NCBI RefSeq assembly: GCF_003918875.1
Contig: NW_025767635.1
Location: forward strand, 806,001 to 870,000
DNA: 64,000 nucleotides
Source of the DNA: Haliotis rubra
Lineage: Eukaryota
Direction of reading: 5' to 3'
Below are positions 15,829 through 25,872 of this stretch, piece by piece; position 1 is the stretch's first letter; each line of letters opens with the position of its first letter. Position numbers and translations under genes: made by a program. Below the pieces are notes generated by a model. It was given only the letters and a program-made list of their open reading frames with translations, made no database searches and had not been told where the DNA came from.

Positions 15829-17464
15829 TTATCCCCGGCATGTAATGCAGGGGGATATAGTCGTCGCATCGTCCTTCTGTCCTCCATCCTCCGTAATCTC
15901 TGTCGAGCATCTCGTTGAATATTTTTCAACAAAACTTGGTAGATATATCAAACAAAACCTAAAGTGGTGCCTTTGCTATTTGCAGGTTTATGTCATTTAT
16001 ATTTTCTTGGTTTCCATGGAAAACGTTTTGGACTTAGTCTCAAATATAGTCGTTTCCTCACAACTTCTGTTAAGTATTTGTCAAAACTTAGTAGATATAT
16101 CAAACAAATCCTAAAGTGGTGCCTTTTGCTGTTTTCAGAATTTTTATTTTAATTTTTCTTGGTTTCCATCAGTTGAACTTTTTGTTTCCGGAGCATAACT
16201 CAATCGTTCTTCGACTTGGTAGGTATATCAAACATAAGCTAAAGTGGTTTTTGCTATTTACAGTTTATGTAATTTTTTGTTTTCTTGGTTTCCATGGAAA
16301 TATTTCAAACTTAGTCTCAAAAGGAGGGATTGGTTTCGTTTCTGGAGCACAACTCAAAAACCGTTCAATATTTTTCAACAAAACTTTAGATATATCAAAC
16401 ATTACAGATTATTATTTCATTTTATTTTTATTTTTTCCCGGTTTCATGGAAACGTTTTGGACTTAGTCTCAAAAAGGAGGGATTGGTTTCTTTTCCGGAG
16501 CATAACTCAAAAACTGTTCAGTATTTTTCAACAAAACTTGGTAGATGTATCAAACAAAACCTAAATCATGAAAAATAAAAATGCCAAAAATCTGCAAATA
16601 GCAAAAGGCAATACTTCAAGATCTGTTTGATATATCTACCAAGTCTTGTAGAAAGATATTGAATGGTTTTCAAGTTGTGAACCGAAAGAAACCCATCCCT
16701 CTCTTTTGAGACTATGTCCGAAACGTTTCCATGAAAACCAAGAAAAATAAAAATGCCAAAAATCTGTAAACAGCTAAAGGCACCATTTTAGGTTGTGTTT
16801 GATATATCTACCAAGTCTTGCAGAAAGATAATGAATGGTTTTCAAGTTGTGCTCCATGAAAACCGAAGCTGTAAACAGTTTCACCGCCCTCTTTGAGACT
16901 ATGTCCCAAAACGCTTCCATGAAAACCAAGAAAAATAAAAATGCCAAAAATCTGTAAATAGCAAAAGGCACCACTTTGGGATCTGCCTTATATCTGCCTA
17001 GTTTTGCTGAAATATATTAAGAAGTTTTTGAGTTGTGCTCCGGAAACAAAGCCAACCCTCCCTTTTGAGACTATGTCCGAAACGTTTCCATGAAAACCGA
17101 GAAAATAATAACTCACAAAAATCTGTAAATAGCAAAAGGCACCACTTTAGGTTCTGTTTGATATATCTACAAATTTTGCAAGAAAAAAATGAATGGTTAT
17201 TGAGTTGTGCTCCGGAAACGAAGCCCACCCTCCCTTTTGAGACTATGTCCAAAACGTTTCCATGAAAACCGAGAAAAATAAAAATGACCAAAATCTGTAA
17301 ATAGCAAAAGGCACCACCTTAGGTTCTTGTGTGATATATCTACCAATTTTGATTGAAAAATATTGAACGTTTTTTTGAGTTGTGCTCTGGAAACAACATG
17401 ATTACAGACGGACGAGGCGTCAACTATATCCCCGCATTACATGCTGGGGGTGGGGTGATAAAAA
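15829..17464. mobile_element. Foldback structure: two inverted arms of a modular non-autonomous element with ~180-190-bp internal tandem units
   Basis: Start ttatccccggcatgtaatgcagggggatatag mirrors end ctatatccccgcattacatgctggggg. Internal units (aaaacttggtagatatatcaaac...aaagtggtgcc) switch orientation at about 16565. Confidence 0.75.
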
Positions 17465-17649
17465 TGCTCTGTCGCAGGCCAGCATTTGTAGCTGAGACAT
17501 GGCTTTGTGAAATAAACCTCTCGACTACTTGGGTATTAAGGCCTCTCGACTGCCAACTTGGTTGTCCCTGGCTACTTGACCTCCAGGACTAGTGGTGCTG
17601 CCAAACACCGATTTCAAGCATAAACAAGATTACATTGGCATCAAATGGT

Positions 17650-17655
17650 TTTATT
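17650..17655 (-). promoter_or_regulatory. Candidate poly(A) signal AATAAA of SELENOP
   Basis: tttatt on the plus strand, about 50 nt downstream of the distal SECIS. Confidence 0.55.
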
Positions 17656-17699
17656 CATGAACTCTTACAAAACCTTGAGTCTGTGTCCATTGCATTCTC

Positions 17700-17760
17700 A
17701 CAAGGTGATCAAAACCACCACTCTTTTTCCAAGTTTTGTGATGGCCTCTCATTCTCAGCA
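17700..17760 (-). promoter_or_regulatory. SECIS element 2 (distal) of SELENOP
   Basis: RNA: AUGAG-aggccaucac-AAAA-cuuggaaaaag-a-guggugguuu-UGAU. It has the AUGA/GA core, a 10-bp helix II (with GU pairs), unpaired As and an apical mini-stem cuu/aag. Confidence 0.85.
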
Positions 17761-18186
17761 GATGGCAGTAGCTACAGTCTCATCAGTTTACAACACCACA
17801 ACACAGATGTGGCAACCTGACCCAAACACCTCACTTGTACAAAACAACTAATGATCCTGCAGTGATTGTGACCCAAACTTGATTGTTGGCTGAAGAAGCA
17901 ATATGTATGGGTAAGGTTCTACATCTATTGCACTGCCTTTGAATAAAACCATTCACAAATACTTCAACTCACATTAATAATCAGATCATGTCATAACAGA
18001 GGCACAGTACAAAGCAGAAATATATTTTGGAAATACTTTCGCTACCATTTGTCTTATCAAATGAAAGTTCTATGTGTTTTGTAATGTGCCCCACCTTGTG
18101 ATGAAAGATGAGCATGCATACAAAATTTATGGTGAAGAAAATGAATGATCTCTGCCCTATGTTGTCCCTAGATGTCCAGCGATGCC

Positions 18187-18251
18187 CCAGTTCTAGCTTC
18201 CTGCATTGGGAGACCGCCAGGTTTTATCCCAAATGCTTTCATTTACACTGG
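18187..18251 (-). promoter_or_regulatory. SECIS element 1 (proximal) of SELENOP
   Basis: RNA: ccagugu-aa-AUGAA-agcauuugggau-AAA-accuggcggu-cucccaaugca-GGAA-gcuaga-acugg. Helix I ccagu/acugg, helix II gcauu(u)ggga/ucccaaugc, apical stem acc/ggu. Confidence 0.75.
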
Positions 18252-18371
18252 CCTCTTTCTGGACAGGTAGGAGGGCCATAGTGACAGAGGGAGAAAGATA
18301 CAGGACAACTGATAAGAAGCTTTTATATGTGCGACATTCACTTTCATTTTCAGGCATATGATCGTTTGGAA

Positions 18372-21300
18372 TTAACAATATATAGTGTAGGGTAGGAAAG
18401 TGGAAGATTGTGACAGATTACTGTCATTCTGTGCCTGTTCCAATGGGTCACTGTCAAGGAGAACCAAGAGGGGTGGTCATTGCTGAGGTCATTGTCATGT
18501 GACTCGGGAGCTGAACCAACTACTCTCCGATCACACTCAGGTGGAGGGAGAGGAGACACGTGAGTTGTCACCTTGTCACTGTCAGGATTCTAAACCAGAT
18601 GGTCAAGAACAGGAGATGGGAGAAGAGCTGGATTGCCCTTGTCATTGTCAAGAGCCTGCAAGTCCAGATGGTCAGTCTCAGGACTGTGGCCGAGTCTGAC
18701 ACAGTCATGAAACAGAGCCGGATTCCTGCGCCTGTCACTGGTACAGTGGACCTGGTCCACTAGTGACCTGCCCTTGTCACTGTCAAGATGACCCCAAACC
18801 TGAAGGTCATTGTCAAGATGATGGATTTTGTCCTGAGCTGTGTTGTCACTGTCAGCTACCCCCCAAACCAGCTGGTCACTGTCAAGTGGAGGGTGACCCG
18901 TCAGACGTCTGAAGCTGTCACTGTCAGGAGGACCCTGTACCTGGTCAACGACAGGAAGCTCCTGTTCTTGGTCACTGACAATTGTGACCTCCTTCTTGAC
19001 ACTGTCAGCACTCAGAGCCACTGGGGCAGCTTCAGCGACGAGCAACTGTTGAAGATCATGATCAAGTGCCATGTCTAAAACGACACTCGCAGTCACCGCC
19101 AGAGGCTGGTCAGTTACATCTGGATTCTGAGACTGCGGGTCACTGACAACGTTTCAGTGACAGATCACTCTGCTGACGTCACTGTCACCTGTTCTGAAGA
19201 CGTCAGGGTTTGGATTTAGGAGACTGATGTCTGCAGGCCTGACAGAGACATCTCTCCCTTAGAGCTGGAGGTGGACGATGTCAGGAACATCTCCAGCCCA
19301 CGGGACGACTGTCACCAAGGTCAGCCAGCTGCTGGTAACACGATCATCTCCGGCTCGACTCGTGCGAGGAGCACAGACAATCATGAGTAGGTGTACGGGT
19401 TGTGGAAGGGGCACTGGGTCAGGCTCAGTGCTGCCTATGGCGATGTGCAAAGTTATCTCTGTTATGGTTCAGCCTGTTCTGACGTCGCAGTCTTCTCAGA
19501 ATCCTACACAAAAGGTCTTGACATCTGGGGGATCTCGAGGGTAGACGTTCTACGGTAGGATCATCTCCCTGCATCTGATCATGGGGGTTGGTTTGATGAC
19601 GAGTTGAGGAATGGTCGTGATGGTGATGTCTCCGACCATGATGGCGTTGATAATTGAGCCGACAGTAGCATGGGCTGTCATAGTAGGTGGTCCAGAGTGC
19701 CATCTGGGTGTAGTGATAGCGAAGGATGGTCATTGGGAATTCAATATGGTAGGTCTGTTGTCCACATCTAGAACAAGAAAATAGATTTTACAGTTATTTC
19801 GGTGTTACTTTTAAGTTAAAACAGACGAGTGGTTTCCCAGGTGATCCACAAAGTCGGAGGACAGTTAGTTCCAAGATTCACACGTGAAGTCCAGCAATGG
19901 ATTAATTGGCCAGAAAGCGTTTGGTAATCTAGTTCAACTTTGAACCCAAAATTCTCCTGTTTCCCCATCGGCATTTATATAACAGAGAAACAGCGCCTTA
20001 ACGAAGTCACCAGACCTTCGAGCCGACCCACTCAGTGAATGGTATGAGAGCTGTCATTTCACAATGAATAAGTGTTGGATCAAGTTTCTATAGATTCTTA
20101 TTTCTAATGGCAATGTGGGAAGATAGTTTAGTTGGTTGCCGACCTGTCAAATATGAAGAAATCGTCCTTGTGGCCGCCGTAGACTCGCTCCCAAAGTCCG
20201 AGGTGCGGAGTGTCTTGGTAGACAGGGAAGGTGACCAGTCTGGCCAGCTGGTTGTACATGAGGAGGGAGCCGTTGCTGTAGTCGTTGATGATGATCATGT
20301 TGATGTCGGGCATGCCGTGATCAGCAAACAAACCACGGAGAATTTCCAGACTGAAGGTGAATGAGTGAGTGAATATTCTGTTATCAGCTGTTACACAGTT
20401 CACATACAGGTACACATCATATTCCTACTGAAATTGGGGGCTATAACCTTCAGGCCATAGTGTTAATCCATTGGAGCCAACACCAGCTTCGTCTGGAACA
20501 GTGCAACACAAACGTAAACTTCCAACAAAATTACTCTGACGGGCGTGTAATCGTCTGTGACAAGTTAAGAAAGGTAACGTTGAAGTTGCGGAGAGGCGTC
20601 TGGGGTATTATCAGAAACAAAGCCCCGGCAGAGAGGCGTCTGGGGTATTATCAGAAACAAAGCCCCGGCAGAGAGGCGTCTGTGGTGTTTATCAGAAACA
20701 AAGCCCCGGCAGAGAGGCGTCTGGGGTATTTATCAGAAACAAAGCCCCGGCAGAGAGGCGTCTGGGGTATTTATCAGAAACAAAGCCATGGCGGAGAGGC
20801 GTCTGGGGTATTTATCAGAAACAAAGCTATGGCGGAGAGGCGTCTGGGGTATTATCAGAAACAAAGCCCCGGCAGAGAGGCGTCTGGGGTATTATCAGAA
20901 ACAAAGCCCCGGCAGAGAGGCGTCTGGGGTATTTATCAGAAACAAAGCCATGGCGGAGAGGCGTCTGGGGTATTTATCAGAAACAAAGCCATGGTGGAGA
21001 GGCGTCTGGGGTATTTATCAGAAACAAAGCCATGGCGGAGACGCGTCTGGGGTGTTTATCAGAAACAAAGCCATGGCGGAAAGGCGTCTGGGGTATTTAT
21101 CAGAAACAAAGCCATGGCAGAGAGGCGTCTTGGGTATGTATCAGAAACAAAGCCATGGCGGAAAGGGGTCTGGGGTATTTATCAGAAACAAAGCTATGGC
21201 GGAGAGGCGTCTGGGGTATTTATCAGAAACAAAGCTATGGCGGAGACGCGTCTGGGGTATTTATCAGAAACAAATCCATGGGTAATGGAGGATGCAGTCA

Positions 21301-21558
21301 GACGTCAAGAGATGAACATACATTTTATCACTGTATTGTTGTAACCAAACACAGCGACACTTACCCTGCGGCCTGGGTTCTACAGAAGGATCAGCTGGCC
21401 TTTAGCAGCGCCACCAACGTCACATTGCCGCGCAACTGCTCCATCGGCCGCACACCATCTACCGACCACGACGCGGGTCGGGAGCAGTCGAGGGCCAGGG
21501 CAGGAGGGGCGAGGACGAAGATGGCTGCTAAAGCCAGCAGAGCCCGTGGGCTCCGCAT
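18372..21558 (-). CDS. SELENOP: Selenoprotein P with about 40 in-frame UGA (Sec) codons
   Basis: Exons 21558-21365, 20350-20144, 19767-18372 (598 aa as read). Signal peptide MRSPRALLALAAIFVLAPPALA, then VTLVALLKAS-U-SFC (UxxC, TGA at 21393-91), FPVYQD, GGHKDDFFIFDRCG..TYHIEFP and His-rich RHHGRRHHHHDH. Then 39 TGA between 19427 and 18477 with no TAA/TAG until 18374-72. Two SECIS-like hairpins follow. Confidence 0.95.
20588..21282. repeat. ~40-bp minisatellite in a SELENOP intron
   Basis: Unit ggcagagaggcgtctggggtatttatcagaaacaaagcc(cc/at). Confidence 0.95.
21522..21556 (-). promoter_or_regulatory. Tandem stem-loops at the SELENOP start codon (initiation stem-loop-like)
   Basis: AU-GCGGAGCC-CACG-GGCUCUGC (8 bp) immediately followed by UGGCU-UUAGC-AGCCA (5 bp). 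Confidence 0.5.
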
Positions 21559-25298: not shown

Positions 25299-25872
25299 TT
25301 ACTTGAGTCCACAAGACGGCGTCAAAGTCAGTACTTTGTATGGCCACCATTGGCAGCAATTACTGCTCGGCACCGTCTCGAAGCAGTCTTTCTGCAATGC
25401 GATTGCCAGTTGCGGAAGTGTTTGAGGCTTATTTTGACGTTGACGTCCACGTCGATCGAGTTGATCCCACAGGTGTTCTATCGGGTTTAGATCTGGTGAT
25501 CGGGAAGGCCATTGCAAGACAATGGCGTTAGAATGGCAAGGTAGTGGACATACTGAAGTATGTGAAGTAGCGTTGTCATGCTGGAACAACTCCCTCTGTC
25601 GGCCCATAATCGGAAGCATGTGACGTGCAAGGACTTCGTTGACGTACCGATTTGCTGTCAAATTCCCCTGAACCACAACTAACTCAGATATTCGTGTGCT
25701 GGATATCGCACCCTACACCATGATCCTGCCTCCACCGAATCTGTCGACCTGTCGAATGCAATTAGGGGCATTATAACGTTCATTTCTCCGACGGTAAACA
25801 CGCTGTCTTCCATCTCGAAAGGTGAAGAAGAAATCGTGATTCATCACGGAACCGGACTCTACGACACCACGT
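25299..25872 (-). pseudogene. Tc1/mariner DDE transposase fragment
   Basis: WFRDESRF...RVYRR, FGGGRIMV*GAIS, VQGNLTANRYVNEVL, FQHDNATSHT, LQWPSRSPDLNPIEHLWDQL. Contains a stop codon and is truncated by the 42-bp array. Confidence 0.88.

What the first reader, a model, noticed from the sequence alone, without database searches (positions are those of the whole stretch)
17650..18251. Two SECIS elements plus a poly(A) signal complete the SELENOP recoding cassette
Seen: a proximal hairpin (18251-18187; AUGAA...AAA...GGAA) and a distal hairpin (17752-17708; AUGAG...AAAA...UGAU with a 10-bp helix II), both with apical mini-stems, then AATAAA at 17655-50. Known: vertebrate SELENOP is distinctive in having two SECIS elements with different roles for the first and later UGAs. 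This independently supports the Sec reading. The proximal element has an A.A mismatch next to the core and may behave differently.
Basis: partly seen in the sequence, partly recalled or inferred. Interest (0 to 1): 0.75.

Follow-up and report, generated by a model that had tools for sequence, protein, structure and literature searches.

The report
Two SECIS elements of abalone SELENOP
The 3' untranslated region of the blacklip abalone selenoprotein P gene carries two conserved hairpins with the hallmarks of selenocysteine-insertion (SECIS) signals, followed by a poly(A) signal; this is the layout already known for selenium-rich selenoprotein P genes, so it is real but ordinary.

Summary
The gene is SELENOP of the blacklip abalone Haliotis rubra, a mollusc and not a vertebrate. 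Spliced RNA contigs cover the last exon and the 3' UTR down to 17677, so both hairpins lie inside the mRNA.

Both hairpins match the published SECIS core consensus UGAN/KGAW. Each has unpaired adenines 11-13 nt from the core, and each folds with a 3-bp apical mini-stem (type 2).

Comparison with H. asinina and H. rufescens:
- The proximal element has 59 of 65 columns invariant, against 50% in the intron. It is the most conserved non-coding block of the gene.
- The distal element has 80% invariant columns and two compensatory base-pair changes.
- Conservation collapses about 10 nt after the conserved AAUAAA.

Formal scoring is weak. Rfam SECIS_1 gives the distal element 26.6 bits (threshold 35) and never reports the proximal one. 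The proximal element has 2-3 purine-purine mismatches between the G.A tandem and helix II.

Two SECIS elements downstream of a multi-Sec SELENOP are described as the usual arrangement across animals. This is a new, unannotated member of a known kind. An earlier scan note on this same window covers the coding part. The true stop is probably TAA 18420-18418, because the window lacks one base there.

The parts
18187..18251 (-). Proximal SECIS (SECIS 1), type 2. Helix I is CCAGU/ACUGG. The core is AUGAA (18242-18238) / GGAA. Purine-purine mismatches sit above the G.A tandem. Helix II is 9 bp plus a bulged U. Unpaired AAA is followed by a 3-bp mini-stem.
   Evidence: Sequence; fold. 59 of 65 columns are invariant in 3 Haliotis species, including a 32-nt invariant run at 18235-18204. 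It lies inside RNA contigs. It is not reported by Rfam SECIS_1.
18170..18266 (-). Extended basal stem around the proximal SECIS (UGUCCAG/CUGGACA, 7 bp)
   Evidence: RNAalifold consensus. One pair changes U-A to U.G in H. rufescens; the other pairs are invariant.
17690..17768 (-). Distal SECIS (SECIS 2). The core is AUGAG (17752-17748) / UGAU (ends 17708). Helix II is 10 bp. Unpaired AAAA is followed by a mini-stem CUU/AAG. Helix I is weak in H. rubra (a U.U mismatch).
   Evidence: Rfam SECIS_1 gives 26.6 bits, E 0.013 in 1.3 kb, and 19.9 bits in H. asinina. Two compensatory pairs (C-G to U-A in helix II; U-A to C-G in helix I) and five compatible one-sided changes. A 1-nt A-run length polymorphism at 17724 falls in the apical loop.
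17650..17655 (-). Poly(A) signal AAUAAA, 52 nt after the distal SECIS core
   Evidence: It is the only canonical hexamer in the UTR and is invariant in 3 species. Three-species invariance falls from 85% (17689-17642) to 14% after 17641. RNA contigs reach 17677 and there is no RNA depth at 17527-17635.
18418..18420 (-). Probable true stop codon (TAA) of SELENOP, hence the start of the 3' UTR at 18417
   Evidence: RNA and DNA contigs of other H. rubra runs carry one extra base after 18469. The corrected frame ends ...PIGTGTEUQ-stop, as in H. asinina and H. rufescens. In the window as it stands the frame runs on to TAA 18374-18372.
18418..19767 (-). Last exon of SELENOP with the Sec-rich tail served by the SECIS elements. 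It holds 39 in-frame TGA in the window's own frame, and 42 once the extra base seen in other H. rubra runs at 18469/18470 is counted.
   Evidence: The splice 20144/19767 is shown by spliced contigs in two runs.

Best explanation
Both hairpins are functional eukaryotic SECIS elements in the roughly 780-nt 3' UTR of the Haliotis rubra SELENOP mRNA. Each folds into a kink-turn core: tandem sheared G.A/A.G pairs formed by AUGA on the 5' side and GA on the 3' side. By analogy with other animals (inferred, not shown here), a SECIS-binding protein of the SBP2/SBP2L family binds this core and recruits eEFSec with Sec-tRNA(Sec) to ribosomes paused at UGA. The roughly 43 in-frame UGAs are then read as selenocysteine. 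The mRNA is cleaved and polyadenylated shortly after the AAUAAA at 17655-17650, just 3' of the distal SECIS. By analogy with mouse and human SELENOP (inferred), the distal element mainly serves the first UGA (the UxxC site) and the proximal element supports processive decoding of the tail UGAs. Shown here: position, motifs, transcription, conservation and covariation. Inferred: protein binding, recoding activity and the division of labour.
For: 1. Gene identity. A 113-aa stop-free piece of the last exon is 100% identical to NCBI 'selenoprotein Pb-like [Haliotis rubra]', Pfam SelP_N. The last exon has 39 in-frame TGA and no TAA or TAG before the stop. H. asinina and H. rufescens each have 42 TGA in the tail.
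2. Both hairpins are in the mRNA. Run X1 has contigs spliced at 20144/19767 with no intron depth, and contiguous contigs from 19767 down to 17677.
3. Both cores fit UGAN/KGAW (UGAA/GGAA and UGAG/UGAU), the published consensus (PMC3753652). Unpaired A-runs lie 13 and 11 nt after the core.
4. Conservation. SECIS 1 has 59 of 65 invariant columns and SECIS 2 has 63 of 79. The comparisons are 50% in the intron, 62-67% in the rest of the UTR and 14% beyond the poly(A) site. The SECIS 1 window ties for the best 65-nt window in 3.3 kb.
5. The distal element has 2 compensatory and 5 compatible pair changes.
6. Rfam SECIS_1 gives the distal element 26.6 bits, E 0.013.
7. Among the seven AUGA tetramers in the UTR, only three are conserved in all three species: these two and one at 17989. 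Read by eye, the third lacks a complementary 3' strand for helix II.
8. The layout (about 151 / 97 / 401 / 79 / 54 nt) mirrors the human SELENOP UTR (254 / 83 / 358 / 81 / 63 nt; PMC9337670).
Against: - No hit reaches Rfam's gathering score anywhere in the window.
- The proximal element is never reported by SECIS_1, even at E up to 10 in 111 nt.
- The distal element of H. rufescens is not reported either.
- The proximal element shows no covariation, because its stems are invariant. Its structure therefore rests on conservation alone.
- The proximal element has mismatches directly above the core. SECISearch3 penalises this when grading (PMC3753652).
- Folding energies are not exceptional.
- The three species are close relatives.
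- The exact poly(A) site was not seen, because contigs cannot show ends.
- There is no functional assay.
Confidence: 0.85

Rival explanations
1. Only the distal hairpin is a working SECIS. The proximal hairpin is a conserved structured element with another role, such as a binding site for a regulatory protein or an mRNA stability element, and it merely resembles a SECIS.
For: Rfam SECIS_1 never reports the proximal element. It has 2-3 consecutive non-Watson-Crick pairs between the G.A tandem and helix II, plus a bulged U. It shows no covariation. Other non-SECIS blocks of this UTR are also conserved, at 18098-18072 and 18020-17956.
Against: AUGA, GGAA, the AAAA run and their spacing are all invariant and fit the SECIS consensus. 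It is the most conserved non-coding block of the gene. Multi-Sec SELENOP genes are reported to have two SECIS elements (PMC13134290). The chance of a loose SECIS-like pattern in this UTR is about 0.06.
Confidence: 0.08
2. Only the proximal hairpin is needed. The distal hairpin is a decaying or auxiliary copy with little activity.
For: In H. rubra, helix I of the distal element carries a U.U mismatch. H. asinina has a C.A mismatch in helix II. The distal element is less conserved than the proximal one (80% against 91% invariant columns). In human cells SECIS-1 alone is reported to be sufficient for full-length SELENOP (PMC9337670).
Against: It has a canonical core (AUGAG/UGAU). Two compensatory changes indicate selection for pairing. 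It has the only SECIS_1 hits. Its conservation is well above intron level.
Confidence: 0.04
3. Neither hairpin is a SECIS, and the matches are chance features of a conserved UTR. The true SECIS lies elsewhere, or the UGAs are not decoded.
For: There is no Rfam hit at gathering score in 64 kb. The loose pattern occurs about 10 times per 128 kb by chance.
Against: There are 39-42 in-frame TGA and no other stop type, conserved in three species, which demands a SECIS. The mRNA ends about 50 nt after the distal hairpin. No other conserved AUGA in the UTR can form the structure.
Confidence: 0.02

Closest known systems
Vertebrate SELENOP 3' UTR with SECIS 1 and SECIS 2 (human, mouse, zebrafish)
   Same: There are two SECIS elements in one 3' UTR downstream of a multi-UGA ORF. 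The poly(A) signal lies just 3' of SECIS 2 (PMC5133445). Segment lengths are very similar: abalone about 151/97/401/79/54 nt against human 254/83/358/81/63 nt (PMC9337670). Both elements are predicted to be type 2, as in fishes (PMC5133445, section 4.4). Non-SECIS UTR sequence is also conserved.
   Different: The host is a mollusc. The tail has about 42 UGAs against 9-21 in vertebrates. Tetrapod SECIS 2 is type 1. The proximal element has extra purine-purine mismatches above the core and escapes the Rfam model. No sequence homology to the vertebrate elements was tested, because no vertebrate sequences were available here. The division of labour is untested.
Multi-Sec SELENOP genes of invertebrates (Baclaocos et al. 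2019, J Mol Biol 431:4381; molluscs with up to 132 UGAs)
   Same: It is a mollusc SELENOP with tens of UGAs in a modular C-terminal tail. [quoted passage not shown]
   Different: I could not read that paper, so I cannot say whether Haliotis or these two elements were included. The NCBI annotation of H. rubra truncates the protein to 170 aa, which stops at the first UGA of the tail.
Rfam RF00031 SECIS_1
   Same: The distal element aligns end to end with the 64-position model: AUGA, helix II, AAA, mini-stem and UGAU.
   Different: Scores are 26.6 and 19.9 bits against a gathering score of 35. The proximal element and the H. rufescens distal element are not reported at all.

Membership tests
Eukaryotic SECIS element (structural definition, as in SECISearch3) | Kink-turn core with tandem G.A/A.G pairs; consensus UGAN on the 5' side and KGAW on the 3' side | tested here: met
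   The proximal core is UGAA/GGAA and the distal core is UGAG/UGAU. Both are invariant in 3 species. The consensus is taken from PMC3753652.
Eukaryotic SECIS element (structural definition, as in SECISearch3) | Conserved unpaired adenines in the apical loop or bulge, at a constrained distance above the core | tested here: met
   AAAA lies 13 nt (proximal) and 11 nt (distal) after UGA and is unpaired in the predicted folds. It is invariant in 3 species.
Eukaryotic SECIS element (structural definition, as in SECISearch3) | Helix II of constrained length between core and apical adenines, without mismatches at key positions | tested here: inconclusive
   The distal helix II is a clean 10 bp with one compensatory change. 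The proximal helix II is 8-9 bp plus a bulged U, with an A.A mismatch above the core. The next pair is G-C, A.A or G.A depending on the species. SECISearch3 itself could not be run.
Eukaryotic SECIS element (structural definition, as in SECISearch3) | Helix I below an internal loop | tested here: met
   The proximal helix I is 5 bp, with a further 7-bp outer stem. The distal helix I has up to 7 pairs, with a U.U mismatch in H. rubra and U-A or C-G in the other species.
Eukaryotic SECIS element (structural definition, as in SECISearch3) | Located in the 3' UTR of an mRNA with an in-frame UGA | tested here: met
Eukaryotic SECIS element (structural definition, as in SECISearch3) | Binds SBP2/SBP2L and supports UGA recoding | not testable with these tools
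   This needs a binding assay or a reporter assay.
Rfam RF00031 SECIS_1 (score-based membership) | Bit score at or above the curated gathering score of 35 | tested here: not met
   The distal element scores 26.6 bits. The proximal element gets no hit. There are no hits at the gathering score in the window. I therefore do not claim Rfam-model membership; the SECIS call rests on structure, context and conservation.
Two-SECIS SELENOP mRNA architecture | SelP_N thioredoxin-like domain plus a multi-UGA C-terminal tail | tested here: met
   PF04592 is recorded on P0001-P0003. There are 39-42 tail TGA.
Two-SECIS SELENOP mRNA architecture | Two separate SECIS elements in one 3' UTR, with the poly(A) site after the second | tested here: met
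   The exact cleavage site was not observed.
Two-SECIS SELENOP mRNA architecture | Distinct roles of the two elements (first UGA against later UGAs) | not testable with these tools
   This is known only from mouse and human work (PMC5133445).

The most novel reading that the evidence does not exclude
The proximal SECIS is a distinct core variant. Above the G.A tandem sits a conserved stack of two to three purine-purine pairs (A.G, A.A, then G-C, A.A or G.A by species). This variant is invisible to the Rfam SECIS_1 model and is the most conserved non-coding block of the gene. It may be tuned for highly processive decoding of about 42 consecutive tail UGAs, possibly through altered affinity for the single invertebrate SECIS-binding protein.
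Probability: 0.12. Interest if true: 0.45.

Novelty: new member of a known kind. Interest (0 to 1): 0.22.

Why it matters
It completes the gene model of an abalone selenoprotein P that public annotation truncates to 170 residues. That model comprises about 43 UGA codons, two SECIS elements and a poly(A) signal. It also shows that the two-SECIS layout, down to its segment lengths, is shared between a gastropod and human. It gives a concrete case of a probably genuine SECIS that the Rfam model misses, which is useful as a caution for automated selenoprotein annotation. It does not open a new question, because the architecture is already described for multi-Sec SELENOP genes.

Tried and rejected
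- Rfam at the gathering threshold on the whole window gave nothing.
- Rfam at E up to 10 on the proximal hairpin alone gave only a meaningless HIV_GSL3 match.
- Rfam on the two whole orthologous loci and on their UTRs gave only a 19.9-bit distal hit in H. asinina.
- My own SECIS-like descriptor was either too strict or too loose. The strict version missed both H. rubra elements. The loose version gave about 10 chance hits per 128 kb. It serves only as a rough chance estimate.
- A covariance model built from the three distal elements (R1) finds only those three elements and not the proximal one. With near-identical training sequences it is too sequence-specific to test shared architecture.
- Two word-based protein searches found only the three Haliotis proteins, so no more distant orthologous UTRs were obtained.
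- Baclaocos 2019 and Shetty 2018 are not held in the library.
- I first took the gene for a fish SELENOP because of Tc1-like remnants in the window. The earlier scan note and one search corrected that.
- I considered the conserved AUGA at 17989 as a third SECIS and rejected it on reading the sequence by eye. It has no complementary 3' strand for helix II.

Full report
**What is there.**

The proximal hairpin spans 18251-18187.
- Helix I is CCAGU/ACUGG.
- An asymmetric internal loop follows. The 5' core is AUGAA and the 3' core is GGAA.
- Helix II is GCAUU(U)GGGA/UCCCAAUGC, with an A.A mismatch just below it.
- An unpaired A-run is followed by a 3-bp mini-stem.

The distal hairpin has its core at 17752-17708.
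- The core is AUGAG...UGAU.
- Helix II is 10 bp with three G.U pairs.
- Unpaired AAAA is followed by a small mini-stem.

AATAAA sits at 17655-17650 and is the only canonical poly(A) hexamer in the UTR. ViennaRNA reproduces the stems, but the energies are not unusual.

**Which gene and which animal.** The minus strand encodes selenoprotein P.
- The last exon (19767 downward) carries 39 in-frame TGA codons and no TAA or TAG until the terminal TAA.
- The stop-free start of that exon is 100% identical to the NCBI protein 'selenoprotein Pb-like [Haliotis rubra]'. That record is 170 aa with Pfam SelP_N, an annotation that stops at the first UGA of the tail.
- Orthologous loci were fetched from H. 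asinina (L001) and H. rufescens (L002). Both tails have 42 in-frame TGA.

**Are the hairpins in the mRNA?** Yes.
- Two public runs contain contigs that join 20144 to 19767 with GT..AG ends on the minus strand, and they have no depth in the intron. They are therefore RNA.
- In run X1 the contigs continue without a gap from 19767 to 17677. That range includes both hairpins.
- There is no RNA depth at 17527-17635, whereas a DNA run (X11) covers that stretch.
- Contigs cannot show the exact end. However, cross-species identity is 85-96% up to 17642 and falls to 39-64% immediately after, then to about 25-34%.
- The AAUAAA and its flanks are invariant.
- The transcript therefore almost certainly ends a few tens of bases after AAUAAA, just 3' of the distal hairpin. 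This matches the main human SELENOP site (PMC5133445).

**Do they score as SECIS?** Only weakly by Rfam.
- Nothing in the 64-kb window reaches a gathering score.
- In a 1.3-kb search the distal element aligns end to end with SECIS_1 at 26.6 bits (threshold 35; E 0.013).
- The H. asinina copy gets 19.9 bits, and the H. rufescens copy is not reported.
- The proximal element is never reported, even when searched alone at E up to 10.
- A loose pattern of my own occurs about 10 times per 128 kb in shuffled sequence. The motif by itself is therefore not significant, and its expectation inside this UTR is about 0.06.

**Why I still call both of them SECIS.**
- Core: both fit the published eukaryotic consensus UGAN/KGAW (PMC3753652). 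They read UGAA/GGAA and UGAG/UGAU, with the A before UGA. The unpaired adenines lie 13 and 11 nt downstream.
- Need: an mRNA with more than 40 conserved in-frame UGAs must carry a SECIS. Of the seven AUGA tetramers in the UTR, only three are conserved in all three species. The third, at 17989, has no partner strand for helix II when read by eye.
- Conservation against an internal neutral standard:

| Segment | Columns invariant in all three species |
|---|---|
| Intron | 50% |
| UTR outside the hairpins | 62-67% |
| N-domain exons | 66-71% |
| Distal SECIS | 80% |
| Proximal SECIS | 91% (59 of 65) |

The proximal element contains a 32-nt invariant run. Its window ties for the most conserved 65-nt window in the whole 3.3-kb region.

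- Covariation: the distal element has two compensatory changes, C-G to U-A in helix II and U-A to C-G in helix I. It also has five compatible one-sided changes, against three single-species mismatches.
- Polymorphism: a 1-nt length difference at 17724 in another H. rubra individual falls in the apical loop, not in a stem.
- Gap: the proximal element gives no covariation because its stems do not vary. The only compatible change is U-A to U.G in the outer stem.

**The odd feature of the proximal element.**
- Above the G.A/A.G tandem the next layers are A.G and A.A.
- The third layer is G-C in H. rubra, A.A in H. asinina and G.A in H. rufescens.
- The pair that closes helix II in H. rubra is therefore not conserved. 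The element carries a run of two to three purine-purine oppositions, plus a bulged U in helix II.
- This probably explains why the Rfam model misses it. SECISearch3 would mark it down in grading, because mismatches just after the core are penalised (PMC3753652).
- I cannot tell whether it changes function.

**Mechanism (inferred).**
- The kink-turn cores would be bound by the SECIS-binding protein. [quoted passage not shown]
- That protein recruits eEFSec with Sec-tRNA(Sec), and the UGAs are then read as Sec.
- The proposed split is the distal element for the first UGA and the proximal element for processive decoding of the tail. This is taken from mouse and human work (PMC5133445) and is untested here.

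**Comparison with what is known.**
- Two SECIS elements downstream of a multi-Sec SELENOP are described as the usual arrangement well beyond mammals. PMC13134290 says so for lamprey 'analogously to other SELENOP genes', citing Baclaocos 2019 on molluscs with up to 132 UGAs. I could not read that paper.
- The abalone UTR layout is about 151 / 97 / 401 / 79 / 54 nt. Human is 254 / 83 / 358 / 81 / 63 nt (PMC9337670).
- Both abalone elements are predicted to be type 2, as in fishes (PMC5133445).
- This is a new, unannotated member of a known kind.

**Side result.**
- The window lacks one C in the run at 18473-18470 (minus strand). The comparison is with both RNA and DNA contigs of other H. rubra runs.
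- With that base, the frame ends ...PUQUPIGTGTEUQ followed by TAA at 18420-18418. This matches the C-termini of the other two species.
- The tail then has 42 UGAs.
- The 3' UTR therefore starts at 18417, not 18371.

Noticed in passing
window 18469-18473: The window has a run of four C (minus strand) where RNA (X1) and DNA (X11) contigs of other H. rubra runs have five. With the extra base the SELENOP frame ends ...PIGTGTEUQ-TAA at 18420-18418, as in H. asinina and H. rufescens, which gives 42 tail UGAs. It is probably an assembly indel or a rare allele.
   Followed up: partly
window 18418-19427 against 19428-20351: The Sec-rich tail is more conserved at the nucleotide level (82% of columns invariant in 3 species) than the exons of the thioredoxin-like N-domain (66-71%). 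This is unusual for a tail described as fast-evolving.
   Followed up: no
window 18072-18098 and 17956-18020: These are strongly conserved non-SECIS blocks between the two SECIS elements: a 27-nt invariant run, and 58 of 65 invariant columns including pyrimidine-rich CUGUGCCUCUGUU. They may be protein-binding sites, by analogy with PTBP1 sites in the human interSECIS region.
   Followed up: no
window 17724: There is a one-base length polymorphism in the A-run of the distal SECIS apical loop (A5 in the window; A4 in another H. rubra run and in both other species).
   Followed up: yes
window 17200-17420: A very high-copy repeat lies just downstream of the gene. Summed contig depth is about 10^5 in DNA run X11, against 16 for the gene, with many rearranged joints.
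   Followed up: no
L002 8806-8877: In H. rufescens a tRNA-like sequence (Rfam tRNA, 31.3 bits), probably a SINE, sits about 40 nt after the SELENOP poly(A) signal. This is where alignment with the other species ends.
   Followed up: no
L001 10701-12908; L002 11833-12947: A glutathione peroxidase gene (PF00255) lies tail-to-tail downstream of SELENOP in H. asinina and H. rufescens. An earlier scan note reports GPX exon-like copies on the same side of SELENOP in the window, but I did not check that gene here.
   Followed up: no
window 20460-21344: There is a minisatellite in the intron upstream of exon 20351-20144. It reads as long repetitive pseudo-ORFs on the plus strand.
   Followed up: no
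window 25299-25676: A Tc1/mariner-type transposase remnant is present (motif ...SPDLNPIEHLWD...). It first misled me toward a fish origin.
   Followed up: no
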